From Ylistrum balloti (Eukaryota): DNA of 64,000 nt. The notes under the pieces are model-generated. The model made no database searches and had not been told where the DNA came from. It saw only the letters and a list, made by a program, of their open reading frames with translations. Shown here piece by piece: positions 8,770 through 56,648 of this stretch. Both the position numbers and the translations under genes were made by a program. The stretch lies in assembly GCF_031769215.1 (NCBI RefSeq), contig NW_026782573.1:124001-188000 (forward strand), read 5' to 3'. Positions within the stretch are counted from its first letter, which is position 1; each line of letters starts with the position of its first letter.

Positions 8770-9395
8770 CTCCTCCTATAACCCATGTAGCTCAATATTA
8801 TCTTCCTTTCGTTTTCGTCGCCTAGTCCTATCCTCCTATAACCCCTGTAGCCCGATGTTATCTTCCTTTCGTTTTTGTCGCCTAGTCCTATCCTCCTATA
8901 ACCCATGTAGCTCAATGTTATCTTCCTTCCGCTTTAGCTCAATGTTACCTTCCTTTCGCTTTTATCGCCTAGTCTTACCCTCCTATAACCCATGTAGCTC
9001 AATGTTACCTTCCTTTCGCTTTTATCGCCTAGTCCTATCCTCCTATAACCCATGTAGCTCAATGTTATCTTCCTTTCGTTTTTGTCGCCTAGTCCTATCC
9101 TCCTATAACCCATGTAGCTCAATGTTATCTTCCTTCCGCTTTTATCGCCTAGTCTTATCCTCCTATAACCCATGTAGCTCAATGTTACCTTCCTTTCGCT
9201 TTTATCGCCTAGTCCTATCCTCCTATAACCCATGTAGCTCAATGTTACCATCCTTTCGCTTTTATCCCCTAGTCTTACCCTCCTATAACCCATGTAGCTC
9301 AATGTTACCTTCCTTTCGCTTTTATCGCCTAGTCTTATCCTCCTATAACCCATGTAGCTCAATGTTACCTTCCTTTCGCTTTTATCGCCTCCCGT
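8770..9395. repeat. 60-bp minisatellite, about 10 copies, with degenerate flanks extending to about 8260 and 9590
   Basis: Unit cctagtcctatcctcctataacccatgtagctcaatgttatcttcctttcgttttgtcg type; successive 60-nt lines begin identically. Confidence 0.93.
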
Positions 9396-12074
9396 AGTTC
9401 AGACCTATTCTTGTATTGTTCATATATTTCAACCCTGTTTTGTAGCTCCAGTAGTTTAGACTTGTATTCGCCTGTAGCCCATGCTCCTGTTGTTCCTGTA
9501 CACCAGTATTTTTCTATTGTAGCTCCTGTAACTCAGCCTTATGGTGTAGTTCAACCCTGTTCTGTATAGGACCTTATGTTCAGTCTTATTCTCCTTAAGG
9601 GGAGAAACTGGTAATATTCTTGAATTTCCAAACAGAAATTACTAAAAGCGGAGGTTGTTATTCATTAATGCTTTTTATAATTATAAATCATACTTTATAT
9701 ATCCAGTAGAATATTAAATAAATAGAATTTATCAGTATCGGTTATCAAAATCACTGAACTAAGTTAACATATGTCAAATTCTACACCTGTTTATATTTTG
9801 ATAGGTAATTCTTCGCCGGTCATACTCCTTCTGACAATCAGATATACAATGTATATAAATTCGACAAAACATTGATCAAAAGATTAGTATTATGTATATT
9901 GAGTTGGTGATCTGATAATATAATTAGATGCACCGAAGTTAAGCTATCAAATGTATATTGGCACATACAAAAAAAAATCTTTCTGATGACAAAGTTACGC
10001 TGGTAGTTCGAAATATCAATACTGCAGAGCCATTTCTTTGAATACAGTTTTATTGTACGTCGTGTTCAGTGCTTCATTTCAATCGATACATGTCCAGGTA
10101 AATATCGATTTGGAAACGCTCGATGTAAACCACCTGTCTAATTATCGATCGAATTTCATACCTGGCCACGTACAAGCAGACAGAGAAAAACTATCATATC
10201 AATAATGATAATTCCTTCACTAGACCATGTGACAGATCTCCACCAATCAGATCTGCGTTCTCGCCTATTGGCTTCATCCTGTTGGGAGCACTATTCAAGT
10301 ACATGTACATACACCGGCTCAGTGTATCGTGGTACAGACTTTGTTTCGTTTTAAGGGATTTTGCGCTGGTTTATCGACTTTCCTCATAAGAGTGGATTAA
10401 AACGACAATTACTGCGACAATTACGGTATGTATAAATATTTTCCTGTTTCGTTTTTACAGAAAAGTCATCTAAATATAAAAATATACATGTATGATTATC
10501 ACATTCAAGTATACATGTCAGGTATTTCATTTATTTTGTTGTACATAATTATTGATAGTTTGATTGCACACCATGTGTCGCATACTATAATGTATTCACA
10601 CGTGCTCTATCTCTGTTGATAAAAACTGGGCTACATTCATGCAGTTTGTAATGGCGGAAATATGAAACACGGAAACTGACTTTTACTTACTCGTACGCAT
10701 ATACTGTATAAACATACTGGTACACTGAATGTGACACATTTATCGACAAGTGTCCTTACTTCGTCTATGTACTAATTTTACTCTAAAACGGAACATATCA
10801 AGAATTTCCTTCCGTGAAGATACGTAAATGATTTTGATAATTTATTCGCTGGGTTTTTAATGAGATTGGACAATATAATATATTTCTACAGTGTTGTAAT
10901 ATGATAAGACCGTCAGGGTGTGTGCCGAATGGTCAAGTGGATGGATGTGTAGATATTCCAAAGGTTACAAAGACACCTAAGGATATTTCTGATATACTAA
11001 ATTTTCTGACCCAGCATTCTTCTCCTGTACAAATAGAGTGTTTCACAAATAAATGCCCTGTTAACACCCTGTTCCATCCAGACCCCATCCCTCTGTCCTT
11101 ATCCCGTCCCAAAAACACCTCTCTGCAGTTACCACAATCCCAACCACATCCAAGTCCCACCCCTCCCTTTACCCAACACCACCCTAACCTCAACCTCCGT
11201 CCTTACTCCCAACCCCACTCCATCACATCCGGTCCCATCACTGCCCTCTTGAAGTAGTGTGGATGATCAATATAGGGTCTGTTTTACAAAACGATAAAAT
11301 GCGTAAGAGCAATACTTCAATATCGTGCTTCAAAACAACTCATAGAGATATAACACTTGATTTTGAGAATTAATCAAATGTATAAAAAAAGTATTACAAA
11401 AAGTAAAAAAAATGTGAGGAACCACAAACATGACGTTATAGCCTGTTATAAAAATATTACAATACATTGTATAAAACTGTGGATAAGTTTAGTTAAATTT
11501 TAAATTACACACAGTCTAAAAAGTGACAAGAAAGGTATAGACGACAGTGTTTAATTAGGGAGATATGTGGGGATAGGTGTTTATATAGTGAAGGGTAAGG
11601 GCGGTGTTACAACCAGCTAATTACCCGTCACCCCGAGGTGAAACATACAGGTGATATTGTGTATTCCATATTTCGATAGAATGTCATCGAATCACAACTA
11701 GACGTGGATGTACAACTAAATAAATATGTACCCGCCAAGGGTCACAGCCAGAAACACGCGCCATCTGGTGTCTGTATACCGACATTTCTCACGTAAACGC
11801 CCTGGGCATACTCATGTATACACGTACATAACAGTGTTATCAGTCCTGAAGGTGTGTGTTATTGAATAGATATTGAGTCCAGGTGTAAACGAGACGAGAA
11901 TCGTGCATTTTAATATTTATGATGATTTGTATCTGTCCAGATAGTTAATGAGAACAATGTTTGTAAATTACAACGTAATATATTACATCTCAGATGTGAT
12001 CATGGAAGTAAAGTCTTAAGGTATTTTGTCGTTTTATGTCTTATTTTTTAAAACTGCATGATAGAATATCACTT

Positions 12075-26921: not shown

Positions 26922-27686
26922 ATGGCGAACATAGCAGACATCGAAGAAATTGTACAGACATGGGCATGGACGGCCTTTCAAAAGACCAGGTCGAAGGACG
27001 TCAGCAAATTAAAACTTGAAGATGTGAGGCTTGACGTGAATTGGTCACGAGTTCGATTCATAACCAGCCAGCCGGAATTTTCAGACGGACGAATGGTAGA
27101 AATGCCAAACTCGCAGGTTGTTTTCACATCAACTTTTGTCAACAATACAGACCAAGAACAGGAACATTCCTTCAAGACAGAACGTACCACCACTTCTGTA
27201 AGTACGGTTACTGTTTCAAAAGGCTACAGCAAAGGGTTTAATCTAGAACTTAAACTAGCACTTCCGGAGGAAGTGGCTGCAGTAACAGCAGGTTTTGGAC
27301 GGGAAGTAAATATGGATAATACAGAGGAGAGTTGTCACGAGGAATCGATCACGTGGGCTGTAGACAGCACCGTCAGGGTGCCGGCAAAACACACGACCAC
27401 TGCGGAAATGGTCGTGAAAGAAAAGCAATTCACTTCTAGCTACAAAATGTCAGTGAGAATACGAGGAATAGTGATAGTCTCCGTGCTAAATTTAAAGGAT
27501 AACAATTCTTTTGTACAGTCTACAGAAGGTGACTTTTCTGTTATCATGGCGGACGAGCTGAAACGGGGACGAAGTGGATATCAAGTGGAAAACAAAACAG
27601 TCATCTTCAATGTAGAGGGTTCTTGTAAGTTTAGGTTTGGGGTTGAGCAGAAAGTACAGCTCAAAGAAAAACCGATCGAAGATTGA
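26922..27686 (+). CDS. ETX/MTX2-domain (aerolysin-like, LIN-24-like) beta-pore-forming protein, 254 aa, single coding exon
   Basis: Uninterrupted ORF with motifs typical of the family: VVFTSTFVNNTDQEQEHSFKT, a Ser/Thr-rich alternating region with the amphipathic hairpin GYSKGFNLELKLALPEEVAAVTAGFGREVNM, WAVDSTVRVPAKHTTTAEMVV, and C-terminal FNVEGSCKFRFGVEQKV. Acceptor ttccag at 26911 implies a 5' UTR intron. No signal peptide. Confidence 0.82.
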   Translation: MANIADIEEIVQTWAWTAFQKTRSKDVSKLKLEDVRLDVNWSRVRFITSQPEFSDGRMVEMPNSQVVFTSTFVNNTDQEQEHSFKTERTTTSVSTVTVSKGYSKGFNLELKLALPEEVAAVTAGFGREVNMDNTEESCHEESITWAVDSTVRVPAKHTTTAEMVVKEKQFTSSYKMSVRIRGIVIVSVLNLKDNNSFVQSTEGDFSVIMADELKRGRSGYQVENKTVIFNVEGSCKFRFGVEQKVQLKEKPIED

Positions 27687-40695: not shown

Positions 40696-42054
40696 TCACA
40701 GATCAGAACTGGTATACAGGTAGATCATGGTGTCGATAGTGGTTACAGCAAAACGACATGTTTGAAGACAAATGAATAAAACCAGACAGTATTTATCAAA
40801 AACTTTCCCTACATCACTCCACGAACACTGTTTACAATTATCATAATTCTCAGTAATGTCGTTATGGCGATTTTCATCCCTGGTTGTTTCTTGAACAGTT
40901 GTGCGTCCTTTATGTCTTCCATCTTTTTCGTTTACTAATGTCTCTTCGTTTATTGCTTGAACTATGTTTTTTCTCCATTTTGGTGTTTTCGGCTGATTAC
41001 GGTTTTCCTCTGTCAGAGAATGTTGGTAAGAGTCCCGTTGATGTTTCAAACTTGTCAGAACAAATTTTTTGATCCAACATGGAATCGGTGTATCTTGGTG
41101 GTTGTGCAATTTAAGTCCAAAAATCGTGAATATCATTATCATTAGACTCAACATCAAATCCATGAGAAGGTAAATACAAACACGAGCTAAATGAGGTTCA
41201 GACGTACTGGGTAGTTTATCGGACACAGCTGTTAGGAACACTGCCATAGACAGCATAAGAGTCACACCATAACCGCTTCTCTCGCCCGGATCTGGAGACA
41301 GCAAAAACACAAGTGGATTCAGAATCCCAATGAAACTAATTGGTAGTAGAAAAACTAAGATTACAAAGAGAGGGCGCCTTTGAAATTCGATTGTCATGAC
41401 AACATAATCACCCAAGGGATTCTCTGCTGTCCGGATTTGGGTTGATAGAACATTCCACATTCCGTTTTCACTAAAGTCATATGTTGTAACAGTATGAGAT
41501 GGCAGAACGAAAGCAATATCACCTTTCTTGTATCCCCATGCTGCAACAATTATTTCACAAAACTGTTTATCAATTGGGTAGTATGCTGTATTCGCTGGAC
41601 AGGAAATAGCATACAAATCTGGTACAATCCATGAAGCAGTTCCGCTGTTATTATAATTTATCTGAATAAAATCATTTCCTATTTTTGCAACTTTATTGTA
41701 AGGTTTACCGATGAATAGTGGAGGAACCCACACTCTTGAAGCTTTCATGAGCACACTTGTGATATTTCCATGCTGCAACGGATCCCATGACATCCGGTCG
41801 TCCGTCCACGTCAAAAGAAAATATCCAGTTATTGATAGTTTTTCGGATTTATCATCAAAGTCATTGATTGAATATAAATTAAAAGCTATGTGAATACTGA
41901 TTGGCTCATCTTGGTTAAACCTAGGACCGAGATTTTCGTTGTAACCTTGAAACAGCTGGTCGTGTAACATCTGCAAATCCTGTCTGGAGGAACACTTCAC
42001 GTGCGGTATTACTATACACATCACCATGGAAATCAGTGTATGACGTGAAACCAT
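40696..42054 (-). CDS. Intronless Cys-loop ligand-gated ion channel subunit, nAChR-like non-alpha (copy 1), 452 aa
   Basis: Signal peptide; LHDQLFQGY helix; WTDDRMSW; Cys-loop CPANTAYYPIDKQFC (C-x13-C); QRRP then M1; M2 GERSGYGVTLMLSMAVFL; M3; intracellular loop; WSDVGKVFDK then M4. No vicinal loop-C cysteines. Confidence 0.95.
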   Translation of the reverse strand: MVSRHTLISMVMCIVIPHVKCSSRQDLQMLHDQLFQGYNENLGPRFNQDEPISIHIAFNLYSINDFDDKSEKLSITGYFLLTWTDDRMSWDPLQHGNITSVLMKASRVWVPPLFIGKPYNKVAKIGNDFIQINYNNSGTASWIVPDLYAISCPANTAYYPIDKQFCEIIVAAWGYKKGDIAFVLPSHTVTTYDFSENGMWNVLSTQIRTAENPLGDYVVMTIEFQRRPLFVILVFLLPISFIGILNPLVFLLSPDPGERSGYGVTLMLSMAVFLTAVSDKLPSTSEPHLARVCIYLLMDLMLSLMIMIFTIFGLKLHNHQDTPIPCWIKKFVLTSLKHQRDSYQHSLTEENRNQPKTPKWRKNIVQAINEETLVNEKDGRHKGRTTVQETTRDENRHNDITENYDNCKQCSWSDVGKVFDKYCLVLFICLQTCRFAVTTIDTMIYLYTSSDL

Positions 42055-43204
42055 GTTACCAACCAGTCTTCAAACACCTTACAATAAAACTTCTACAAGC
42101 AACCCTTACTGCCTTTCCCCGCGAAACGAAACAAAGTACTTTTGTTGATATGATAACTTAAGTACCAGAGTGGTATTAGTATATTGTATCCTGTCCAATC
42201 ACAAAACAACGCACACTGATTCACTCATGTCAAATTTTCATTAATATGATTATGAAAAGTGATCACATGCAGGCATCCCTTTGTAAATACACACCGACGC
42301 AAGGCAGTTTACCTGGAGATTTAATCATACACCAGTCAACAAATAAGGCTTTTTTGACGTCACGCAAACGTATACAATGTTGTAAAAAATAAACTGTAGC
42401 GCTGAACAAATACTATTTGTTGATGAGGTGACCGTCCCAACAGAGAATCAATATTAAATACCGAAATTGATGTGTTTTGATGTGATTAGAAACACGCACG
42501 AAAATTACTCTCGACAGATCAATGTATATTTTTCAAGTTTTTAGGAAATTGACGAAGAAGCACTGTACATATGCAGATCAAAGTGATACAGTTCTATATG
42601 TTGTTGTTTTATGTATTATTTGTATAACATGATGCTATATGTTTACAACTCTGCCAGTTATTTCAACTACGTAACAGAAACTGACATCATTAACTATTCA
42701 TCAGGTCGGACATATCATGACCTGTTAGTTTCTGGTTATTTTAATTTCGAGAAATGGTTGACAGATGTTTTTAAACGTCGACAACATAATGTTACGGAGC
42801 TGACAATAATCGATCTTCACGGACAATCTTTACTGACAATAATCGATCTTTACTGACGATGATCGATTTTCCACATTTAAGCTGATTTATGATTTATCCT
42901 GTTTTCTTAGCAGAGTTGACAACGTAGGTGTTTTTCCCCTCACTCCTCATATAAACAACTCCTTTGAGGTTTCATCCAGACCCTTCCATATTGTTGAATG
43001 TATTTCAATTGTTTTAAATCAGAGTGTAATCATTTGTGACTGTCGATGCAAACTTAATTTCATTTACCATACCTGAACAAATACTTATTACTTTGAAGAA
43101 ATAAAGACCATCATGGAAATTGTGCAAAAGTCATACAAGTGAATAACACCTTTTGATACAAATTTAGAATGAGATATAGTAAAGCCAATTGATAAAACTG
43201 CACC

Positions 43205-43515
43205 ATAAAATTGTTTCGTCCTTCTAGGGCTTGTTAGCGATACTACATCATACGGGTGTTTCGTCCTTCTAGGCCTCGTCAGTGATACTACATCATAAAA
43301 CGATTTCGTCCTTCTAGGCCTCGTCAGTGATGCTACATCATGCAGCTGTTTCGTCCTTCTAGGCCTCGTCAGTGATGCTATATCATAAAACTGTTTCGTC
43401 CTTCTAGGCCTCGTCATTGATGCTTCATCATACAGCTGTTTCGTCCTTCTAGGCTTCGTCATTGATGCTTTATCATACAGTTGTTTCGTCCTTCTAGAAC
43501 TCGTCACCGATGCTA
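43205..43515. repeat. 45-bp minisatellite, about 7 copies
   Basis: Unit tgtttcgtccttctaggcctcgtcagtgatgctacatcatacagc; period 45 (43213, 43258). Confidence 0.92.
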
Positions 43516-46500
43516 AGGGCATTATTGTAGATACATTATTAAAAGAGTAAAGAGAGATACCAATCGTGATTCTGGTGATATATATCTTCTTAAGTAAAAC
43601 ACATGGTATCAAGTCAAATTTGGTAAAACAATTACAACACCATTCCACCTTTAATTCAGTATCTTTACAAAGAAATAATTTGGAAGAATCATTCTTATTT
43701 TAACCATCCCCAATACTTCAAAAGCCGTGCTTGTGTAAACGTTTTTCGTCAGACTTTTAATGTTCCGTATAGGATTAAAATCGCTTTGAGATTACTTCTA
43801 TTTATTTTCTTGCTTTATTCGCCTTAGATTTTAATGCATTATTCGTATCGTTGTGTCATAGTATATCCTGTGGAATTGTACGAAGCGGCGACACACGTAG
43901 ATACAATGTGTATTTTTTGGGAAAAGTAGGAGTAACATTGAAGGTTTGCTGAATGGGTTTAGTTTGGTTTGATATTGTTGAACAGATATGTACATTTTAG
44001 GAGGCTTACCTGTGGAGAGTGTTGGTGTCGGGTGCGTGTGTTTGTGTGAGGCTGGGATATGTTGGTGTAAGACTTTGTCTATGAGTGCGGAACTGAAGCC
44101 GACTTAATTGTGCTACCTAATTGTTACTTGCAATCGACTCCTACATAAGTATGTACTCCAAAAGTGATGTAATATCACATCTATTGTGCGTTTCCATGAT
44201 CATCTGATTTACTCTCATCATGATGATAAGATAATGTTACGTACATCAATAGTATGATGGTTTGGGTCTAGATTTCTTATTGACAGATATGGTTATTCAA
44301 GAATGACCCCTCTATGTTCGAAAGCATACTTTGAGCACGTGCCTCTGTGGGATTCTTTAATATGTTCGTGTCAACCTCATTTTGATATTACGGAAATAAT
44401 GCCGATTTTATAGTGCTGTCAAACTGAAGTATACTGCTAAAGGTACCCAACAGGATTACCAATCCGTTCATATTGAAAACGGCCATAACTACCATTTATG
44501 AAGACTGGAATTTCTTGACAAGCGGATAGACCTCCAATCTTTCCTCACAGAGGCAGTAACGTAATATATATATTGTACTTATACGCGATGCTTGTTCACA
44601 AAATGGAAATGTACAGATCATTTCTGAAATCAACAGGTAAAATATTATGATAGCCGTGTGGGTGTTTTAATCTACTTTAAGATACTTATTCACGAAAGGT
44701 TCTGTTTTAGCTGTTATCAGAGATGTCATGAAGTCGGTTCCAAAATTAATCCTTTTTAGCCTATTTTTGATAGCCAGTCCAAAACCATTGAAAATGATAT
44801 CTGCAGTTTGAGAAGTATTATGCTACGTGACCTAAGTGATAAGGATAATAAAATCAATATGTGGATTTGATCTGAAAACCCTTGAACGTGCGAGAAAAGA
44901 AGATGCATGCTGTATCTCTCTACTAGACGTAAGATATGACTAATTTGTGAGTCTACACTTTTTGAGAGCCGAAGCATATGGTCTTGCATAGGAGCTAATG
45001 CTACTCCAGAATCCACGGTTCATTAGCATATCCATAAAAATACGTTGTTGCAACGGTCGTGTGTAGTTTGCACTAGCTGACATTTCAACTTACATCCGTT
45101 AAGTTGTGCTTTTTAAATAATAAGTGTGTCCTTATCGGAAACCTGGCTGATCATGATAAGAATAATGACTTATCTGCAGCGAGTTACAACTGCCACCACA
45201 CATAGTTGTACATTATTTGATAATTCACAAAGGCAAATAGGAACCATGTTGTGCGATGCACGGCAAAAAAGGTTGCGTCGGTGAAAAATTCCTAATAGTG
45301 TTAATGTTGATTCATTTTGAGATCACGTGATAGATCAGAATGAATGGTTATGTAAAGAGGCCCGTGAAAACCAGTTTTCACTGCAAGGTACGCGGAAGAA
45401 AATTATCTGATGATTTAATAACTGACTGGAGATGGCGTTTGTTATTTGATTTATTTATGTATTGCGTTATTAATACCCATTTGTTGTGGTATTTCAATGT
45501 ACGATCGTAGGAGGCGGCTTAAAGTGAGTCCTCTGAAGAATAACATTTTTCTCTTATCTTTTACCAGGAAGACATCGAAGAGACCAAAATAGATCTGCTG
45601 CCTCATTACAATGCTTGGGTTATTGACTTTTCTTTTCTTTATATGTTTTTCCCCCACTCTTGGTGTCCCTCCTTATACCCGTCCTCGTATGACCTTGTGT
45701 GTTGCATGGACATTGCATCCATAAAATGAAATTAATTACTGAATCCGAATAAGCCGACACAAGACTGGCAGCATGAAAATTCTGAATATTTGCAGGTCCG
45801 TAACTAATGCAAAAATATAAGATGCAATATGCTTGCAATTTTCAAAAATGACCTACGACTTTCAAGCAGCCGAAGGAGCATGTTGTAACGCATATATATG
45901 TAAATCTAGGAGACAATTGTAATTCTATGTACTTTATTTCGCACACACAACATGATGAGATTATCAAATGTGGAATGTACATTAAGCAATTAAGACACCA
46001 TCTTCAAATTCTAAAATTTTGTACAGCAATTAACTATCTTAGGGTAACAGACATTTGCGAATACATAAATGACGTTTACACGTTATCTTTTCCTCATTGA
46101 TGGATCCGTGATAGATTGGTCATAACAAAATATATTTCCAGGAGTTAAGTTAGATAAGTTGTTAAAGATTAATTACATTTTGCATAACGATCATTAAGAA
46201 CGTGTTGATATGGATTGTATTTACAGTATGTAGATATATCATAGATCAAATGACAATACTATGACGCCATATTGGCCTACATCAACGTTTTGCACGTCGC
46301 TTCAGATACCACCATTGTAACTTTACATCTATGTCCAATAAAATGTATAACAAATATATTTGAAATGTCTACAAATCTATCGAACGGTTGTCATGTTGTA
46401 TTTATTTGTCAATCTGAATGCAACATGGGGCAAATTAATAATCATCACGTTAAAACGCCATTCCATTTATCTGTCACTCAGATTGCATTCACGTGGTGAT

Positions 46501-46825
46501 CTCTACTGCATTTCAATTATCTTGTGTGCACTTTTGCACAATACATTCGTTTTACTCTTAATGGAAAACGTTTCTCGTTAATTCTAATTTCTTGATCGTT
46601 TTAATTTTGAATTGGAAATCACCTATAAAGATCAATAAAAATATCCATAGAAATACTACAAATGCTTTAGAATTAAGCGTCTTTTCAGGATCATACCCAA
46701 GAAACAGACAACTGCTTGATGAAGATTATAACTCACTATCCCCAGTAAAATCAAGTCAATGTATACATCTTTTAAAATGGTTCAAATTATTTTCTTTTTC
46801 ATATTTATTGCCTCCGTCATTTGAT

Positions 46826-48157
46826 TTATTCATATAAAACAAAATCGATCACATTAACAGTCAAACGGCATAACTGAAGAAAAGTAAACACAAACAAACA
46901 TAATTTATCGAACATCTTTGCAACATCAACCCAGGAAAAAGGTTTATTTATATCACTGGTGCTAGTGTCATCGATGCTGTTTCGGAAGTTTTTTTCATCC
47001 TTTTTTGTTTCAAAATCAACTGTTAGTCCTTCAACTTTGTCGTCTACCAAATGTTCTTTTTTCGCTGTAACTGTGACTTGTCTCCATTTCGATGTTTTAG
47101 GCTGATTACGGTTTTCGGAGTTCAAACAATGTGTTTTAGTATCCTTCTGTCCTTTGGAGTACATCCGTACCAATCGCTTAATCCATTCAGGGATTGGGGT
47201 ATCTTCTTGTTTGTGCAATTTAAGTCCCAAAATTGTAAATATCATAATATTTCCACTTAATATCAAATCGACAAGAATATATAAACAGACACGAGCTAAA
47301 TGAGGCTCGGACGTACTGGGTAGCTTATTGGACACAGTCGACAGGAACACTGCCATTGACAGCATAAGAGTCACACCATAACAACTTCTCTCGCCCGGAT
47401 CTGGAGACAGCAAGAAAATGAGTGGGTTCAAGATTCCAATAATATTAACTGGTAGGAGATAAATTAAAAGTACAAATAAAGGTCGCCTTTGAAATCGTAT
47501 ATTCATTTCAATGTAATCACCAAAGGGGTTGTTTATCACACGAATTTCGGTTGACAGAACATCCCATATTCCATTTGCAAAATAATTTGGTGTTATTGCA
47601 TGCCTGTTTGGCAGAATATATTCATAATTATCCGTCTCGAAACGTAAGGGGGTAACATATATTCCACAAAGTTGTTTGTCAAACGGATAGTAAGCTATAT
47701 CTGCCGAGCAAGAAACATGAAACAAGTCCGATACAGCCCAAGTAGCGTCACCATTGTTATCATATCTCACCTTAATGAGGTCATTTCTTAAGGGTTTGAA
47801 ATCATTATAGGGTTTTCCAATGAACAAAGATGGAATCCATGCCTTCGGCGGATATACATTTACACTGGTGATGTTTCCATGTTGCGAAGGGTCCCAGGAC
47901 ATTCTGTCATCATTCCATTTTAAATTGAATGTTCCTAAGATTGAGAATTTTCCAGTTTTATCGTCAAATTCACTAACTGTATAAAAATCGAATATTATTT
48001 GTATAGAGATTTTCTCAGTTTGATTGTTTTTCGGACCAAGGTCTTTGTTGTAATCTTGAAATAACTGATCCAGTAGAATTTGTGCATCTTGTCTCAACAA
48101 ACATTCCACTTGAGGTATCAAAAGAATTGTAGAAACAGCAAAAAGTTGTAAAAGCAT
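46826..48157 (-). CDS. Intronless nAChR-like Cys-loop subunit (copy 2), 443 aa
   Basis: Same architecture; Cys-loop CSADIAYYPFDKQLC; M2 GERSCYGVTLMLSMAVFL. Confidence 0.95.
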   Translation of the reverse strand: MLLQLFAVSTILLIPQVECLLRQDAQILLDQLFQDYNKDLGPKNNQTEKISIQIIFDFYTVSEFDDKTGKFSILGTFNLKWNDDRMSWDPSQHGNITSVNVYPPKAWIPSLFIGKPYNDFKPLRNDLIKVRYDNNGDATWAVSDLFHVSCSADIAYYPFDKQLCGIYVTPLRFETDNYEYILPNRHAITPNYFANGIWDVLSTEIRVINNPFGDYIEMNIRFQRRPLFVLLIYLLPVNIIGILNPLIFLLSPDPGERSCYGVTLMLSMAVFLSTVSNKLPSTSEPHLARVCLYILVDLILSGNIMIFTILGLKLHKQEDTPIPEWIKRLVRMYSKGQKDTKTHCLNSENRNQPKTSKWRQVTVTAKKEHLVDDKVEGLTVDFETKKDEKNFRNSIDDTSTSDINKPFSWVDVAKMFDKLCLFVFTFLQLCRLTVNVIDFVLYE

Positions 48158-48827
48158 CGTTTTAACCGACTAGCCAATATATAACATTACACAGCAATAC
48201 ATGAGTTGCTTCTCTCACTGTTGGCTTTCATATGAACCGAATGCTAGCGACAAGGAGACATTAAACAAATTTATTGATCTTTTTATATCCAATCAGTGAT
48301 CAAGACTTCTAATTTATGAATACTATATTTTCTACTGTGGTACTGTTACACGTACATAGGCCTTGTAGCATCCATCCAATAATGAAATTTTAGAGTAACA
48401 CAAAAAGTATAAATAAGCTTGTAGCTACTCATTTTACGAATGAATAGTTGAATACCTGTTTCATCAATACTCTCAACTTCACAATTAAGACGGAAATTAT
48501 GTCAATCACGTATATGTACTTTACCTACCTACATGTATTAGCAGTTGCTTTAAGGTCAAAGCGAGTCATAATGATGTGAAATGTACCTGCCATTTAGTTA
48601 GGTGTGTTTAAAATGAAAGTAACAATATTTTCATCCAGCTGTACAGATTTTGTTCACACCGAAGAAACCTATTGATAACTATACATTATGTGGATGCAAG
48701 AATCAGAACTTGCTTTTATGTTGTTGAACAACATGTCTGTCAATACAACAAATTCCTTTGATGCTGTCTCTGATACTGTTTTATCAATGCACACAGATAA
48801 TGCAGTGTTCACTTCAGACAAGTATGT

Positions 48828-50171
48828 TTACATGTCAGAATATATATATACCGCAAAATCGATCACATTAACAGTCAAACGAATTAACTGAAGAGAAATA
48901 AACACGCACAGACAAAATTTGTCGAACAATTTTGCCACTTCATCCCAGGAACATTGTTTACGTTCTTCAATGACGGTAGAATCATCAATGCTTTTTCGGA
49001 CGTTCATGTCATTATTTTGTGTTTCATAATCCACTGTTTGTTCTCCATCTTTATCGTCTACCAAATGCTCGTTTATTGCTCTTACTTTTACCTGTCTCCA
49101 TTTTGGTGTTTTTAACCGATGCTGATTTTCAGAGTTCAGGGAACGTATGTTAGTAACCGTTTGCCGTTTCGAACACATCCTTACGAATCGTTTAATCCAT
49201 TCTGGGATCGGGGTGTCTTCTTGTTTGTGCAATTTAAGTCCCAAAATAGTAAATAGCATAATATTGCCACTTAATATCAAATCGACAAGAATATACAAAC
49301 AGACACGGGCTAAATGAGGCTCGGACGCACTAGGTAGTTTATCGGACATACTCGACAGGAACACTGCCATAGACAGCATAAGAGTCACACCATAACAACT
49401 TCTCTCGCCCGGATCTGGAGGCAAGAGGAAAATCAGTGGATTTAAAATTGCAATTATACTAATCGGCAGAAGTAAAATTAAAAATGCAAAAAGAGGACGC
49501 CTTTGAAATTTTACATTCATGGCAACATAATCAACCAAGGGATCGTTGATCACACGAATTTCAGTCGACAGAACATTCCATATTCCATTTTCAAAATAGT
49601 TCGGTGTAAGTGAACTTCTGTTTGGCAGAATAAATTCGTAATTATTCGTCTCAAGGCTTGAAGGTATAACATATACTCCACAAAGTTGTTTGTCAAACGG
49701 ATAATAAGCTATATCTGCCGAGCAAGACACACGGAACAAGTCCGATACAGCCCAAGAAGCGTCACCTTTGCTATCATATATCACCTTAACTAAGTCATTA
49801 CTTAAAGTTTCAGCATCATCATAGGGTTTTCCGATGAACAGAGACGGAGTCCATACTTTTAGAGGATACACTTTTACACTGGTGACATTTCCATGTTGCG
49901 AAGGGTCCCAGGACATTCTATCATCATTCCATTTTAAATTGAAAGCTCCTAAGATTGAGAATTTTCCAGTTTTATCGTCAAATTCATTGATTGTATATAA
50001 ATTAAAAGTTATATCAATAACGATTTTCTCAGTTTGATTGGATCTCGGACCAAGAATTTTGTTATAATCTTGAAACAGCTGATTATGTAATATCTGTACG
50101 TCTTGTCTCAACCAACATTCCACTTCAGGTATTGAAAAAAATATAGAAACAGCCATTAGAAGCAAAATCAT
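48828..50171 (-). CDS. Intronless nAChR-like Cys-loop subunit (copy 3), about 447 aa from the probable start at 50171
   Basis: The ORF track starts at 50339, but MILLLMAVSIFFSIPEVEC (ATG at 50171) aligns with the signal peptides of copies 1 and 2, and a shared upstream motif sits at a matching distance from this ATG. Cys-loop CSADIAYYPFDKQLC. Confidence 0.93.
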   Translation of the reverse strand: MILLLMAVSIFFSIPEVECWLRQDVQILHNQLFQDYNKILGPRSNQTEKIVIDITFNLYTINEFDDKTGKFSILGAFNLKWNDDRMSWDPSQHGNVTSVKVYPLKVWTPSLFIGKPYDDAETLSNDLVKVIYDSKGDASWAVSDLFRVSCSADIAYYPFDKQLCGVYVIPSSLETNNYEFILPNRSSLTPNYFENGIWNVLSTEIRVINDPLVDYVAMNVKFQRRPLFAFLILLLPISIIAILNPLIFLLPPDPGERSCYGVTLMLSMAVFLSSMSDKLPSASEPHLARVCLYILVDLILSGNIMLFTILGLKLHKQEDTPIPEWIKRFVRMCSKRQTVTNIRSLNSENQHRLKTPKWRQVKVRAINEHLVDDKDGEQTVDYETQNNDMNVRKSIDDSTVIEERKQCSWDEVAKLFDKFCLCVFISLQLIRLTVNVIDFAVYIYSDM

Positions 50172-52638
50172 TTTTAACTGATATTCCGATACAACAACAC
50201 ACAGTTTGATACGTACTGCGTCCCTCACAAGGTCTCTCATGAAATGAACTGTTTGATGTTGACACTCGGTTAACTTATTGATCAGAACCTGATGTCCAAT
50301 CAGATGATGGTATAACCCACGCATCCAACGTTTTGTCATTGTGATAATTTTATAAAGAGCTGACAGTTGATTTGTTGTGGTGTATCGTTATACAAATATG
50401 TCACTGAATTCTAATTCTGTTAGTTAGATAGGTTAGAAAGAGAGATTGATGATGCAAGTGTGTTAATACAGGGAGTGTAGAGTTGGTTTACAGATTTACA
50501 GATACGACGTTTGAAATTGACTCGATAGATCTTCATATAGTTTTTACTACATTTCAATGACGCCAAAACAAACTTACAGAAACTGCTTTTCATTCTTGCA
50601 GTACAGAAATATTGATTACATAAAAATTAAGATTTGGCCCATTTCCTAAAACTTTACGGAAAGGAAATTATCTGTTTCCCGAATTTTATTCAGCAAGCGG
50701 TTAATGGTGTGAATTCCCAATGCTACTACAGAGTCGTTTACGCATGACCTAACGCTTCGTTTGGAAGGTGTGCATTTATCCATTTGATGGAGATTGATAA
50801 CAAAGCAATATTTACAAAACGCTGTATTCATGGATATTTACATGGCAAAACCCTGCGGACTACGTATCGTTAAATTCTAACGCGTGATTGAATCTATATC
50901 GCGAAATGAATATAGTTAACGTAATACTTTTAATATTTTCTCTTGTGGTTTGAAGGATGTTTGTTTCATAAAAATGATAATATGAACGATATGATGGAGA
51001 CAATTTTACGATGACAAGTCGTTATCAATAAATCACAACGGTTATCTGGGTCATTTCACTGTTGACTAGAAAACCATGTATCGAAGATTCTACAAAGGAC
51101 TGATGTAAGCTAGGTGTCTCCATAATGGATTTGACCAGGTAGCTTTTCTACAGTGGAACTACAATCCACTGCTCTCTTTTGGGAATCTCTACACATTGAA
51201 CTGTGACACCTATGTTGTGTTTTAGTGGAAACTATGGTCTCTATGATGGATATTGTTGGTTTTTTCAAATATTCGACAATGACATTGAAGGATGGGGTAC
51301 GGTGATGGTGGGTTGATTTTAGCCAGCCAGGGAAATGTTTTTGCTGCCCACAGTATGAGTTTTAGTGAAATATAGAGCATTAAAATATGTAAGTTGGTGA
51401 TTCATGTTTCATTGTTTTTAATGAAATAGTCATTTGTATGTTCATTTGCCAAATAACGGCCAGTTTTCAGAGCTGTCTAGCCACTACTCACCTTTTATTA
51501 ATGGTGGCTGTCTCTTACCTACCACATTGTAAGTCATCGTCACCCAATCTACGCACGAGTTGTTTGATAAAAGGTAAAACATGGGTAGGTCCATTTGACG
51601 AGAGTGTTCAGAGGATCAAATATTCAGATATTGAGGAAAAACACAAGCTGGTTCAGTGAGTCTGAATATTTCAGCTTCCGAACTTTAAACTCAATGGAAC
51701 TAATTTAAGGGAACATTTAATATTTATGAAGATTTTAAAAATCAGGAGGGCAAAAATTGTCAAAATTGGTCTCGGAAAGTAAACAAATTTGTTATTTACA
51801 TCAGAAGCCTCGCTCACCAATTTAGACCTGAAAATCATTGTTAAGGCAAAACTCTTTAATCATTTAAACAGTTTTCCTGTCAAAATGAATGCGTATGCTG
51901 CGACAGATTTCTGATCATCGTTTGGCGCGAAAATACAGCTTTCGTAATAGAACATATTCTGCAGCTGATTTCCAGTAAGATTTATTGTTTTGTGATATCA
52001 AATTACTATTTGAGCATTGACAGCTGGTTTTGCACTTGACTTCACATACCAAGCTGGTTATAAGTGGTGGTTTTCAACATTTGAATTTCTCAATGCTTTT
52101 CATTTAAAGAAAAAAGGTAACTGCTCACAATGTAGACGTATGTTAAAGCATTTTTAAGGCCGTAACGCAGAACCGAGCACCTCCTAAAGGACACCGTAAC
52201 CCACGTTTTTTATATTTCAACATCTCTTTCATTTTCATTATAACGGACATGTTCATGAAGTTTGTATGATAATGATGATCTAAACCATGCAACATGGTAT
52301 TGAGAAAATTACTGGTTTCGAAGCTCACGTCGCTTGAATATTACGGTAAATTTATTTCACCAGCTATGCAAAAGAAAAATATATGCTACATTGACAAAAC
52401 ATACAGATTATTTTTTATGATCATTTTTGTTTTCCAGAAAATAAACCACCAATATTCGTATAAACCTGAAATATCGCGTTGAATTAACGATTTTAATCCA
52501 TGTTGAATCATCGTACAATGTTAACTATCCCGTTTAAACCAGTCTTTCACTTTGCCAATCTTAAAACCTGTTATCAGAGATAAACTTTTCTCTGTCGACT
52601 ATCATTTTTCGGGGTCAAGCGGCGAATAAAACAAAGTT

Positions 52639-56135: not shown

Positions 56136-56648
56136 ATGGAAAAAGTGAAATTATTTTACCATGTCACAACTTCGCTTTTCAAACCAAACATCATTCAAGC
56201 ACAAGCAATTATTCCACAGCCCCAAAATCAATCGGCAGATTGGATGCGACTTTTGAATCCAATGTACAAGGATAAGATTCCAGATGGAGTCTGGTTCTGT
56301 TCAACACTTTTCAATGGTAATCTGCCAAACAAATCGCCTTATGGCACACAGCGCGTGAAGATACCGATTGAAAAAGTTTTCAGCCAACTTGGAAGCAGCG
56401 TGAATCTGTACCTTGGACAAAAAGCGGAGGTCTCCGGTAACAAATATATCCGGCTTATGGCTGTAAAGGAAGGCGATACCTTTGAATGTTTAGAGCATAT
56501 GCAGAAGATTGATCCTGTCGACAACGAATGGATGAAGTTTACTTCGGATACCGAATTTGCAGTTGCTAAACGACCTGTTTGGGTGGAAGTATTTTTCCCC
56601 TATAAAATTCAGGTGGAAAACGAAGAGTGGGATACAGTGGAAGAGTAA
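56136..56648 (+). CDS. Stand-alone PHYHIP C-terminal-like domain protein, 170 aa, single coding exon
   Basis: GVWFCSTLFNGNLPNKSPYGTQRVKIPIEKVF, NLYL, YIRLMAV, IDPVDNEWM and VWVEVFF are collinear with PHYHIP C-terminal motifs recalled from memory (GVFFS...PQDSPYGRWRFQIPAQRLF, NLYF, HYAILVL, LDIACNKFL, LILEIIY). No FN3 domain. Acceptor tttttatag at 56090; AATAAA at 56843. Confidence 0.8.
   Translation: MEKVKLFYHVTTSLFKPNIIQAQAIIPQPQNQSADWMRLLNPMYKDKIPDGVWFCSTLFNGNLPNKSPYGTQRVKIPIEKVFSQLGSSVNLYLGQKAEVSGNKYIRLMAVKEGDTFECLEHMQKIDPVDNEWMKFTSDTEFAVAKRPVWVEVFFPYKIQVENEEWDTVEE

What the first reader, a model, noticed from the sequence alone, without database searches (positions are those of the whole stretch)
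40696..50171. Tandem intronless nAChR-derived channels that have lost the acetylcholine site: candidate chemosensory receptors
Seen in all three copies: no vicinal Cys and no YxCC in loop C, which is also about six residues shorter than in alpha7 (QIRTAENPLGDY, EIRVINNPFGDY, EIRVINDPLVDY). The loop A Tyr is replaced (LFIGK). The loop B Trp is kept only in copy 1 (AAWGY) and lost in copies 2 and 3 (TPLRF, IPSSL). The loop D Trp becomes Y, T or A. The Cys-loop and cation-type M2 are intact. Known: bivalves have large intronless nAChR expansions, and cephalopod chemotactile receptors are intronless, clustered, nAChR-derived channels with a remodelled ACh pocket. Inference: an analogous bivalve family gated by environmental or microbial ligands.
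Basis: partly seen in the sequence, partly recalled or inferred. Interest (0 to 1): 0.72.

Follow-up and report, generated by a model that had tools for sequence, protein, structure and literature searches.

The report
Scallop orphan nicotinic-type channel genes
Three neighbouring single-exon genes in a scallop genome encode nicotinic-receptor-like cation-channel subunits that lack the acetylcholine pocket, but they are ordinary members of a bivalve gene expansion of over 100 genes that is already published, and a chemosensory role remains untested.

Summary
Three intact minus-strand ORFs (452, 443 and 447 aa) carry both Cys-loop receptor domains, a C-x13-C Cys-loop and a cation-type M2. None has a loop-C Cys pair, a loop A Tyr or a loop D Trp. 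Only copy 1 keeps the loop B Trp.

The genes are under purifying selection (c2-c3 dN/dS 0.31 at dS 0.47). The genome is Ylistrum balloti.

The cluster is not special. I extracted 91 other intact single-exon paralogues from this genome. None has the Cys pair, 1 has the loop A Tyr and 3 have the loop D Trp. Pore and coupling residues are nearly invariant across them.

This is the bivalve intronless, tandem nAChR expansion described by Jiao et al. 2019. A 2026 preprint already raises the alternative-ligand idea for binding-site-substituted and "CR-like" molluscan clades.

Copy 1's model matches classical nAChR subunits (Z 30-34) better than cephalopod CRs (Z about 23, 21% identity). Any likeness to CRs would therefore be convergent.

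No RNA data exist for this species, so the chemosensory reading is neither supported nor refuted.

The scan already noted two similar arrays elsewhere in this genome (s1-258787, s1-238081). The follow-up on s1-258787 reached the same verdict.

One small new point: the transmembrane DNA looks homogenised by gene conversion while the ligand-binding domains diverge.

The parts
40696..42054 (-). c1: intact single-exon gene, 452 aa, nAChR-like non-alpha cation-channel subunit. Of the classical ACh-contact aromatics it keeps only the loop B Trp.
   Evidence: ORF; Pfam LBD 125.7 bits and TMD 57.5 bits; AF2 pLDDT 86.3 with full pLGIC topology; Z 30-34 to nAChR subunits; present in the public protein collection as P0001.
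46826..48157 (-). c2: intact single-exon gene, 443 aa. Loop B Trp replaced by Leu and loop D Trp by Thr.
   Evidence: 73% identical to c3; dN/dS 0.31 against c3; exact protein not in the public collection.
48828..50171 (-). c3: intact single-exon gene, 447 aa from the ATG at 50171 (the open frame continues to 50339). Loop B Trp replaced by Ser and loop D Trp by Ala.
   Evidence: sister to c2 in the tree, support 99/98.
41557..41601 (-). c1 Cys-loop (C152-x13-C166, containing YPID). Equivalents: c2 47666-47710, c3 49680-49724.
   Evidence: Coordinates verified by translation. Both Cys, the Pro and the Asp are invariant or nearly so in 94 paralogues.
41398..41448 (-). c1 loop C hairpin (residues 203-219): no Cys pair, two-residue tip. 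Equivalents: c2 47507-47557, c3 49521-49571.
41521..41556 (-). c1 loop B (residues 167-178), Trp173 kept. Equivalents: c2 47630-47665 (Leu), c3 49644-49679 (Ser).
41698..41730 (-). c1 loop A (WVPPLFIGKPY): the Tyr position is Gly, and the Asp of WxPD is Pro (Ser in c2 and c3). Equivalents: c2 47807-47839, c3 49821-49853.
41809..41835 (-). c1 loop D strand: the Trp position is Tyr. Equivalents: c2 47918-47944 (Thr), c3 49932-49958 (Ala).
41212..41292 (-). c1 M2 pore helix with cation-type rings (-4' Asp, -1' Glu, 9' Leu, 20' Asp). It lies inside the tract that looks homogenised among the three copies. Equivalents: c2 47321-47401, c3 49335-49415.
   Evidence: nucleotide identity 87-94% here against about 60-65% elsewhere for c1 vs c2/c3; synonymous-site reversal.

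Best explanation
c1, c2 and c3 are functional, selectively maintained genes for subunits of pentameric, cation-selective Cys-loop channels. They belong to a scallop-specific (Pectinidae) branch of the known bivalve expansion of intronless, tandemly duplicated 'nAChR' genes. Shown: intact ORFs, both receptor domains, the Cys-loop, a confident pLGIC fold, purifying selection, and conservation of the pore rings and of the elements that couple the extracellular domain to the pore. Also shown: the classical ACh contacts are missing on the principal face (loop A Tyr, loop C Tyr-x-Cys-Cys; loop B Trp in c2 and c3) and on the complementary face (loop D Trp), and loop C is cut down to a tight hairpin that cannot cap a pocket as it does in nAChRs. 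Inferred: interfaces formed by these subunits do not bind ACh in the classical way. Most likely they assemble with themselves or with close paralogues into orphan channels gated by something other than ACh. The tandem copies arose by birth-and-death duplication. Their ligand-binding domains diverge, while gene conversion appears to keep the M1-M3 pore module alike. The tissue, the ligand and any sensory role are unknown.
For: Identity: Pfam LBD and TMD in all three. PDB sequence hits to nAChR beta1, alpha6, alpha3, alpha4 and alpha7 and to 5-HT3A at E 1e-38 to 1e-30. AF2 pLDDT 86.3, pTM 0.76, with a beta-sandwich and four TM helices. VIA Z 30-34, rmsd about 2.5 A over about 350 residues, to muscle, alpha7 and alpha4beta2 subunits.

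Functionality: c2-c3 dN/dS 0.31 at dS 0.47 (LBD 0.27, TMD 0.21); other pairs 0.19-0.31. A second individual or haplotype (run X1) differs at 3 of 759 and 5 of 592 bases in contigs lying wholly within c2 and c3 coding sequence. In the contigs that are mostly flanking DNA it differs at 66 of about 2,300 and 21 of 778 bases, plus gaps. The one indel in c2 is in frame, 9 bases.

Channel machinery: in 94 paralogues, pre-M1 Arg 94/94, Cys-loop Pro 94/94 and Asp 93/94, M2-M3 Pro and Ser 94/94, -1' Glu 90/94, 6' Thr 92/94, 9' Leu 92/94, 13' Val 90/94.

ACh site gone.

Family context: at least 95 stop-free matches to c2, from which I extracted 94 intact single-exon ORFs including c1-c3; 151 LBD matches in the genome. 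Among the 91 paralogues other than c1-c3: 0 with a loop-C Cys pair, 1 with loop A Tyr, 3 with loop D Trp, 64 with loop B Trp. This matches Jiao 2019: 99-217 genes per bivalve, 138 in Mizuhopecten, intronless, in tandem arrays, and few with full principal sites.

Lineage: all close homologues are Pectinidae. The clade {c1, Mizuhopecten P0002/P0012, Argopecten P0003, (c2, c3)} has support 100/99. The Mizuhopecten syntenic locus has one intact and two fragmented copies.

Gene conversion: synonymous difference between c1 and c2 is higher than c1 vs Mizuhopecten in the LBD (0.72 vs 0.58) but lower in the TMD (0.40 vs 0.66). Bootstrap support is 0.991 and 0.999 respectively.
Against: There is no expression evidence at all: no RNA run exists for this species, and the exact c2 and c3 proteins are absent from the public protein collection. 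Jiao 2019 report that intron-poor copies are more often silent. No functional data exist for any member of this clade. The related orphan Alpo4 could not be activated by more than 30 compounds, so 'a ligand-gated channel on its own' is an assumption. The genome also encodes canonical alpha-type loop C motifs, so co-assembly with true ACh-binding subunits cannot be excluded. The paralogue sample was seeded with c2 and capped at the best 95 of 224 candidates, so alpha-type single-exon genes could exist outside it. dN/dS of 0.3 is relaxed compared with typical neurotransmitter receptors.
Confidence: 0.6

Rival explanations
1. One reading: the cluster, and by extension the expansion, is a bivalve counterpart of the cephalopod chemotactile receptors. 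On this view they are peripheral ionotropic chemoreceptors in mantle edge, tentacles, gill or larvae, gated by environmental or microbial molecules.
For: They share the general attributes of CRs: derived from nAChRs, intronless, clustered, without ACh contacts, and with a cation pore. The pocket positions in loops B, D and F differ between paralogues while the scaffold and pore are conserved, and loops have higher dN/dS than scaffold (0.26-0.49 vs 0.14-0.23). The LBD diverges while the TMD looks homogenised. In bivalves the gill, a water-facing organ, shows the highest nAChR-family expression and lacks ChAT expression. A preprint reports a 'CR-like' clade that includes bivalves.
Against: No expression data exist for these genes. 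dN/dS is below 1 in the loops, so there is no sign of the diversifying selection reported for CR pocket residues. c1's model is not closer to CRs (Z 22.6-23.1, 21% identity) than to nAChRs (Z 30-33) or 5-HT3A (Z 28.6, 25% identity). CR pockets are rich in aromatic and hydrophobic residues (Y58, W122, F124, F192), whereas here the equivalent loop positions are often small or polar (G, T, A, S). The same traits occur in at least 94 paralogues, many of which, by analogy with oyster data, are expressed in embryos, gonad or under stress rather than in sense organs.
Confidence: 0.18
2. They are accessory or structural subunits, like vertebrate muscle beta1 or neuronal beta3/alpha5. They would co-assemble with canonical alpha-type subunits in ACh-gated heteromers and tune conductance, trafficking or desensitisation without contacting ACh.
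For: The best sequence and Foldseek matches are muscle beta1 chains, and beta1 also has Tyr at the loop D position. Public annotation calls the orthologues 'beta-3-like'. The genome has canonical Y-x-C-C-x-E-P-Y-P-D loop C motifs in three exon-sized LBD hits, with none in the reversed-pattern control, so partners exist. Pore and coupling elements are conserved, as an obligate heteromer partner would require.
Against: More than 90 non-binding subunits against a handful of alpha-type genes is hard to explain by accessory roles alone. Loop C is truncated far beyond what is seen in vertebrate accessory subunits: about 9 residues shorter than beta1. The Asp of WxPD, which I know as a well-conserved structural residue in nAChR subunits, is replaced in c1-c3 and in most paralogues.
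Confidence: 0.2
3. They are receptors for another endogenous small molecule (choline, betaine, an amine, protons or metal ions) acting in non-neuronal tissue such as ciliated gill epithelium, embryos or haemocytes.
For: Precedents appear among the structural matches: betaine-gated ACR-23 (Z 30.3), DEG-3/DES-2, zinc-activated ZAC (Z 23.5-24.9) and the pH-gated sTeLIC (Z 20.6). Bivalve family members are expressed before the nervous system forms, and in gill, gonad and after infection or stress.
Against: Nothing is specific to c1-c3. Betaine and choline receptors generally keep a cation-pi aromatic box, which is missing here, most clearly in c2 and c3.
Confidence: 0.2
4. They are non-functional retrocopies that have not yet acquired stop codons.
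For: Intron-poor bivalve nAChR genes are more often unexpressed. Two of the three Mizuhopecten copies at the syntenic locus are fragmented. c2 and c3 have no entry in the public protein collection.
Against: Three ORFs of 443-452 codons remain intact after dS 0.47 to over 1.2 of divergence, with dN/dS 0.19-0.31 in every pair and every domain. Coding DNA is several-fold less polymorphic than the flanks, and the one indel seen in the coding sequence is in frame. Pore and coupling residues are invariant.
Confidence: 0.03

Closest known systems
Bivalve/lophotrochozoan intronless tandem nAChR expansion (Jiao et al. 2019, BMC Genomics 20:937, PMC6896357)
   Same: Single-exon coding sequence, tandem array, lineage-specific duplication, LBD-TMD architecture, and mostly non-alpha subunits with incomplete ACh sites. 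The paper counts 138 genes in the scallop Mizuhopecten, and this genome has at least 95-151.
   Different: Nothing categorical. These are members from a species not analysed in that paper (Ylistrum balloti). New here are the family-wide residue census and the contrast between a diverging LBD and a homogenised TMD.
Cephalopod chemotactile receptors CRT1 / CRB1 (PDB 9e6b, 8eiz)
   Same: Derived from nAChRs, intronless and clustered, with ACh contacts replaced and a cation channel.
   Different: Different lineage: all close homologues are Pectinidae. Only 21% identity and Z about 23 to CRs, against Z 30-33 to classical nAChRs. No aromatic/hydrophobic pocket signature, no detected diversifying selection, and no expression or ligand data. 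Any resemblance would be convergent.
Alpo4, orphan nAChR-like receptor of the annelid Alvinella pompejana (PDB 8bx5; eLife 2023, PMC10338036)
   Same: A lophotrochozoan expansion member without the loop-C Cys pair, insensitive to ACh and with no known ligand. Structural match Z 25.2.
   Different: Alpo4 keeps the aromatic cage (F103, W159, Y199, Y205, W65). c1-c3 have lost nearly all of it and have a much shorter loop C. Identity is 18%.
Vertebrate non-ACh-binding nAChR subunits (muscle beta1; neuronal beta3/alpha5)
   Same: Best sequence matches (E 6e-38). No Cys pair (beta1). Tyr at the loop D position in beta1, as in c1.
   Different: Vertebrate accessory subunits are multi-exon, few in number and have long loop C. 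They are obligate partners of alpha subunits, which is not known for c1-c3.
'Cys-less', 'nAChR-D' and 'CR-like' clades of the MolluscaGenes nAChR survey (2026 preprint, PMC13174522)
   Same: Molluscan nAChR-superfamily clades that lack YxCC or carry substitutions at ACh-coordinating positions. The CR-like clade is reported to include bivalves, and the alternative-ligand hypothesis is stated explicitly.
   Different: The preprint's Cys-less clade is described as carrying anion-type (PAR) M2 motifs, whereas c1-c3 have the cation-type GER motif. I could not test which of the 15 clades c1-c3 fall in, because no sequences from that study were available.

Membership tests
Cys-loop pentameric ligand-gated ion channel superfamily (cationic nAChR/5-HT3 branch) | Extracellular Neur_chan_LBD followed by the Neur_chan_memb transmembrane domain | tested here: met
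   Both Pfam domains are above cut-off in all three ORFs.
Cys-loop pentameric ligand-gated ion channel superfamily (cationic nAChR/5-HT3 branch) | Cys-loop: two Cys separated by 13 residues, with the aromatic-Pro-x-Asp core | tested here: met
   C152-x13-C166 with YPID in c1; YPFD in c2 and c3. Conserved in 94/94 paralogues.
Cys-loop pentameric ligand-gated ion channel superfamily (cationic nAChR/5-HT3 branch) | Beta-sandwich ECD plus four TM helices | tested here: met
   AF2 pLDDT 86.3; Z 30-34 to nAChR chains.
Cys-loop pentameric ligand-gated ion channel superfamily (cationic nAChR/5-HT3 branch) | Cation-type M2: -1' Glu, no Pro insertion at -2', 9' Leu gate | tested here: met
   The stretch from -5' to 0' reads P-D-P-G-E-R, with 9' Leu and 20' Asp/Asn. 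Ion selectivity itself was not measured.
ACh-binding nAChR alpha subunit | Vicinal Cys pair at the tip of loop C (YxCC) | tested here: not met
   No Cys in loop C of c1-c3. The hairpin tip is two residues long.
ACh-binding nAChR alpha subunit | Principal-face aromatic box: loop A Tyr, loop B Trp, two loop C Tyr | tested here: not met
   Loop A is Gly in all three. Loop B Trp is present only in c1 (Leu in c2, Ser in c3). Loop C keeps a single Tyr two positions beyond where the second Tyr would sit.
ACh-binding complementary (non-alpha) nAChR subunit | Loop D Trp on the complementary face | tested here: not met
   Tyr, Thr and Ala in c1, c2 and c3.
Bivalve intronless tandem nAChR expansion (Jiao 2019) | Coding sequence in one exon | tested here: met
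   Uninterrupted ORFs from signal peptide to M4. UTR introns cannot be excluded without RNA.
Bivalve intronless tandem nAChR expansion (Jiao 2019) | Tandem arrays formed by lineage-specific duplication | tested here: met
   Three same-strand copies within 9.5 kb. c2 and c3 are sisters at 99/98 support, in a Pectinidae-only clade at 100/99. A syntenic three-copy locus exists in Mizuhopecten.
Cephalopod chemotactile receptors (CRs) | Membership of the cephalopod CR clade | tested here: inconclusive
   No CR sequences were available for a tree. Structure-based identity to CRT1 and CRB1 is 21%, with Z 22.6-23.1, lower than to classical nAChRs. All close homologues are scallop proteins. There is no sign of a special relationship.
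Cephalopod chemotactile receptors (CRs) | Intronless, clustered, ACh contacts replaced | tested here: met
   These features are also shared by the whole bivalve expansion, so they are not diagnostic.
Cephalopod chemotactile receptors (CRs) | Pocket residues under diversifying selection | tested here: inconclusive
   Pairwise dN/dS in the six binding loops is 0.26-0.49, higher than the scaffold but below 1. Site models need more sequences, and dS is saturated between species.
Cephalopod chemotactile receptors (CRs) | Expression in external sensory epithelium | not testable with these tools
   No RNA run holds the locus. The only holder is a genomic DNA run.
Cephalopod chemotactile receptors (CRs) | Gated by hydrophobic or environmental compounds and not by ACh | not testable with these tools
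   Requires electrophysiology.

The most novel reading that the evidence does not exclude
The near-total absence of ACh contacts across at least 94 intact single-exon paralogues, combined with an invariant pore and coupling apparatus, diverging binding domains and a TMD that looks homogenised by gene conversion, could mean that the bivalve 'nAChR' expansion is really a large family of ionotropic chemoreceptors for external or microbial cues. That would be a convergent counterpart of cephalopod CRs and insect IRs, and this Pectinidae-specific cluster would be one young, diversifying branch of it.
Probability: 0.15. Interest if true: 0.8.

Novelty: new member of a known kind. Interest (0 to 1): 0.3.

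Why it matters
What the 100-200 nAChR-like genes of bivalves do is a real open question, and no bivalve chemoreceptor has been shown to work. If branches like this one proved to be environmental sensors, it would be another independent conversion of a neurotransmitter receptor into a chemoreceptor, alongside IRs from iGluRs and CRs from nAChRs. It would also give bivalve sensory biology and aquaculture (settlement, feeding and predator cues) a molecular handle. This window adds little beyond the published picture. It gives three well-defined, intact candidates, a census showing that the ACh site is missing family-wide in this scallop while the channel machinery is conserved, and a hint that the ligand-binding and pore modules evolve under different regimes.

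Tried and rejected
RNA evidence: the single run that holds the locus (X1) is genomic DNA, with even depth of about 10 over intergenic sequence and 1-3% differences. It says nothing about transcription.

I ran only a position-level pattern search.

Phylogeny with cephalopod CRs: no CR sequence could be obtained. The PDB sequence search lists only the 60 best hits, and the CR papers PMC7605239 and PMC10228259 are not held. I substituted a structure-based comparison.

Expression of the Mizuhopecten orthologue OWF52397.1 in Jiao's Table S1: that table uses PY_T gene IDs which I could not map to the accession.

Pseudogene reading: rejected on dN/dS, intact frames and low coding polymorphism.

Extra or degenerate copies in the window: none found.

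The 186-aa ORF at 43088-43648 between c1 and c2 is a translated 45-bp tandem repeat with no Pfam hit, and I do not take it for a gene.

Not run: complex prediction, because any pLGIC pair is likely to score and the report's claim of assembly rests on family membership alone. Also not run: the large representative protein search and the third word search, because the family is not in doubt.

Stretches of N in the window (214 bases) were left untouched.

Full report
OBSERVATION. The minus strand of the window holds three intact ORFs: c1 at 40696-42054 (452 aa), c2 at 46826-48157 (443 aa) and c3 at 48828-50171 (447 aa). The c3 frame stays open up to an ATG at 50339, but its alignment with c2 begins at the Met at 50171. 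All three match Pfam Neur_chan_LBD (E 2e-36 to 1e-30) and Neur_chan_memb. c2 and c3 are 73% identical, and c1 is 54-57% identical to each. tblastn finds no further copy or fragment in the window.

The residue-to-site assignment rests on three things. The first is the HMMER alignment of c1 to human muscle beta1. The second is fixed offsets from invariant landmarks: loop A Tyr is the W of WxPD plus 7, loop B Trp is the second Cys-loop Cys plus 7, and loop D Trp is the W of WxD minus 5. The third is a 107-sequence L-INS-i alignment. The canonical motifs themselves come from established nAChR knowledge and are visible, with machine-reading noise, in Fig. S3 of Jiao 2019.

The result is as follows. 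Loop A Tyr is Gly in all three. Loop B Trp is kept in c1 and replaced by Leu in c2 and Ser in c3. Loop C has no Cys. Loop D Trp is replaced by Tyr, Thr and Ala. The AF2 model of c1 (pLDDT 86.3, pTM 0.76) places beta9 at residues 200-212 and beta10 at 215-226. Loop C is therefore a hairpin with a two-residue tip, about 9 residues shorter than in beta1 and about 6 shorter than in alpha7 (my own knowledge of the alpha7 sequence). The Cys-loop (C-x13-C) and a cation-type M2 (-4' Asp, -1' Glu, 6' Thr, 9' Leu, 13' Val, 20' Asp/Asn/Asp, no -2' Pro insertion) are intact.

WHAT ORGANISM AND WHAT FAMILY. Two paralogous ORFs elsewhere in the assembly are 100% identical over their full length to proteins named from Ylistrum balloti, so the genome is that saucer scallop. 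The word-based protein searches return only Pectinidae proteins as close homologues: Mizuhopecten 55-56%, and Argopecten, Pecten and Ylistrum 42-50%. They are annotated 'nAChR subunit beta-3-like', 'beta-like' and similar.

In a maximum-likelihood tree, c1, the Mizuhopecten pair P0002/P0012, Argopecten P0003 and (c2, c3) form a clade with 100/99 support. c2 and c3 are sisters at 99/98. The Mizuhopecten locus around P0002 also has three tandem copies, but the two flanking ones are fragmented across frames. The Argopecten locus has one copy within 10 kb either side. This is birth-and-death evolution of a small, scallop-specific array.

THE CLUSTER IS NOT SPECIAL WITHIN ITS GENOME. A six-frame search of the 648-Mb assembly with c2 gave 95 stop-free matches out of 224 candidates. 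The Pfam LBD model gave 151 matches out of 309 candidates, with c1-c3 in the lower-scoring part of the list (128, 113 and 109 bits against a top score of 177).

I fetched all 95 loci and extracted 94 intact single-exon ORFs, c1-c3 included. Among the 91 paralogues other than c1-c3:
- none has a loop-C Cys pair;
- loop C is 21-33 residues by the same measure that gives 25 for c1-c3 (mode 24-27);
- the loop A position is Tyr in 1;
- the loop D position is Trp in 3;
- loop B Trp is kept in 64.

The parts that make a channel are almost invariant across all 94. Pre-M1 Arg is 94/94, Cys-loop Pro 94/94 and Asp 93/94, M2-M3 Pro and Ser 94/94, -1' Glu 90/94, 6' Thr 92/94, 9' Leu 92/94 and 13' Val 90/94.

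One caveat applies. The sample was seeded with c2 and capped, so it is biased towards c2-like single-exon genes. Conventional subunits do exist in this genome. A degenerate pattern for Y-x-C-C-x-E-x-Y-P-D hits three places, with none in the reversed control. Each hit lies inside an exon-sized LBD match, which is what intron-containing alpha-type genes would look like.

ARE THE GENES ALIVE? Nei-Gojobori estimates give c2-c3 dS 0.47, dN 0.148 and dN/dS 0.31 (LBD 0.27, M1-M3 0.21, intracellular loop 0.31). Other pairs, including comparisons with the Mizuhopecten and Argopecten orthologues, give 0.19-0.31 overall.

The one public run that holds the locus is genomic DNA from another individual or haplotype. 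Its contigs differ from the window at 3 of 759 and 5 of 592 bases where they lie wholly within c2 and c3 coding sequence. In the contigs that are mostly flanking DNA they differ at 66 of about 2,300 and 21 of 778 bases, plus gaps. The only indel inside c2 is an in-frame 9-base deletion in the intracellular loop. Both lines of evidence point to purifying selection, so decaying retrocopies are very unlikely.

Transcription could not be assessed, because no RNA run exists for this species. c1 is in the public protein collection, but the exact c2 and c3 proteins are not, nor is anything more than 56% identical to c2. They may be unannotated or merged into a longer gene model; I cannot tell which.

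EVOLUTIONARY MODE. Within the LBD, the six binding loops have higher dN/dS than the scaffold (0.26-0.49 against 0.14-0.23) but never exceed 1. The sister pair L004/L005 shows the same pattern. The loop B, D and F positions differ between paralogues, while loop A (LFIGKPY) and the loop E framework are conserved.

DNA identity between c1 and c2/c3 is about 60-65% over most of the gene but 87-89% across M2-M3. Synonymous differences reverse between domains. In the LBD, c1-c2 (0.72) exceeds c1-Mizuhopecten (0.58). In M1-M3, c1-c2 (0.40) is well below c1-Mizuhopecten (0.66). Bootstrap support for these two orderings is 0.991 and 0.999. The simplest reading is gene conversion that homogenises the pore module within the array while the binding domains diverge. 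This is an inference; strong codon constraint in M2 is a weaker alternative.

COMPARISON WITH KNOWN STRUCTURES. c1's model superposes best on classical nAChR subunits: muscle alpha, beta and delta, alpha7 and alpha4beta2, with Z 30-34, rmsd about 2.4-2.8 A over about 350 residues in the best cases, and 16-27% identity. In the one-representative-per-cluster search the ranking is muscle nAChR 32.6, alpha7 31.7, alpha4beta2 29.9, 5-HT3A 28.6 (25% identity), Alpo4 25.2 (18%), squid CRB1 23.1 (21%) and octopus CRT1 22.6 (21%). There is thus no special similarity to the cephalopod chemotactile receptors.

WHAT IS ALREADY PUBLISHED. Jiao et al. 2019 (PMC6896357) describe 99-217 nAChR genes in five bivalves, with 138 in the scallop Mizuhopecten. 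Most are intronless or intron-poor, lie in tandem arrays and show lineage-specific expansion. Only 33 of 132 oyster genes are alpha-type, and only 13 of those have complete principal sites. [quoted passage not shown] Expression is highest in gill, and some genes are active before the nervous system forms or after stress and infection. More intron-poor than intron-rich genes are silent.

The MolluscaGenes preprint (PMC13174522) resolves 15 molluscan clades, including 'Cys-less' and a 'CR-like' clade that extends to bivalves. It raises independent transitions to other ligands, to be tested functionally. The Alpo4 paper (PMC10338036) shows a lophotrochozoan orphan without the Cys pair that does not respond to ACh or to more than 30 other compounds. 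A 2024 study of bivalve tentacle transcriptomes states that CRs are 'only known from cephalopods', and its receptor screens covered GPCRs, iGluRs/IRs and Piezo, with no mention of nicotinic receptors. The chemosensory hypothesis for bivalves is therefore still open and untested.

Earlier notes of this scan report two similar arrays elsewhere in this same genome. The follow-up on one of them reached the same verdict.

MECHANISM, WITH SHOWN AND INFERRED STEPS. Shown: each gene encodes a signal peptide, a glycosylatable beta-sandwich ECD with a Cys-loop, four TM helices, a short disordered M3-M4 loop, a cation-type pore and conserved ECD-TMD coupling residues, all under purifying selection. Also shown: neither face of the subunit carries the classical ACh contacts, and loop C cannot cap a pocket.

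Inferred from family membership: they pentamerise and conduct cations through a 9' Leu gate. Inferred from the missing contacts: interfaces between these subunits do not bind ACh classically. Best guess, about 0.6: they form orphan channels with themselves or with close paralogues, gated by a non-ACh ligand.

Sub-hypotheses on top of that guess are an external chemoreceptor role (about 0.18) and a receptor for another endogenous molecule in non-neuronal tissue (about 0.2). The main alternative is an accessory role in ACh-gated heteromers with the genome's alpha-type subunits (about 0.2). Dead retrocopies are about 0.03.

VERDICT. The finding is a correct description of three ordinary members of a known, published gene expansion. 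The attractive chemosensory idea is neither new nor tested here. Novelty: new member of a known kind. Interest: about 0.3.

Noticed in passing
window 26922-27686 (+): A 254-aa ORF matches Pfam ETX_MTX2 (the aerolysin / epsilon-toxin family of pore-forming proteins) at 34.1 bits, above the 22-bit cut-off, about 13 kb from the receptor array. It is an aerolysin-like gene candidate in a scallop genome. I did not examine its exon structure or its relatives.
   Followed up: partly
window 56136-56648 (+): A 170-aa ORF has a PHYHIP_C match at 26.1 bits, just under the 27-bit cut-off. Another first-stage note (s1-249790) flagged the same ORF.
   Followed up: partly
window 43212-43515 (ORF 43088-43648, -): A 45-bp tandem repeat of 6.8 copies (86% matches) lies between c1 and c2. 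Its translation produces the 186-aa repeat ORF, which has no Pfam hit. It is probably a minisatellite and not a gene.
   Followed up: yes
window 41150-41350, 47260-47460, 49270-49470 (M2-M3 of c1, c2, c3): The pore-module DNA is 87-94% identical among all three copies, and synonymous divergence there is lower within the array than to the Mizuhopecten orthologue. The LBD shows the opposite. This is the signature of gene conversion confined to the TMD.
   Followed up: yes
window 46979 (c2, intracellular loop): The genomic run X1, from another individual or haplotype, carries an in-frame 9-base deletion here. Contigs in coding DNA differ from the window several-fold less than contigs that are mostly flanking DNA.
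   Followed up: partly
L096:2203-3305 and L096:17892-18391 (Mizuhopecten yessoensis NEDP02001812.1): Two fragmented, frame-shifted copies flank the intact orthologue P0002 (L096:10001-11371). The three-gene array is therefore syntenic, but it is decaying in Mizuhopecten. The 356-aa model P0012 (OWF52396.1) lacks the Cys-loop/loop B region and may derive from one of these copies.
   Followed up: partly
window 46826-48157 and 48828-50171: The exact c2 and c3 proteins, and anything more than 56% identical to c2, are absent from the 5.8-billion-cluster protein collection, although c1 is present. They may be unannotated or merged into a longer gene model in the public annotation.
   Followed up: partly
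G000:C200:883280-883309, C240:1369571-1369600, C984:48684-48713: Three canonical alpha-type loop C motifs (Y-G/S-C-C-P/T-E-P-Y-P-D) lie inside exon-sized LBD hits. These are presumably the conventional intron-containing ACh-binding subunits of this scallop.
   Followed up: partly
window 8855-9397 (+): A 180-aa ORF has a short DUF4716 match (33 bits overall, with no stretch passing on its own), in a region of strong negative GC skew. Not examined further.
   Followed up: no
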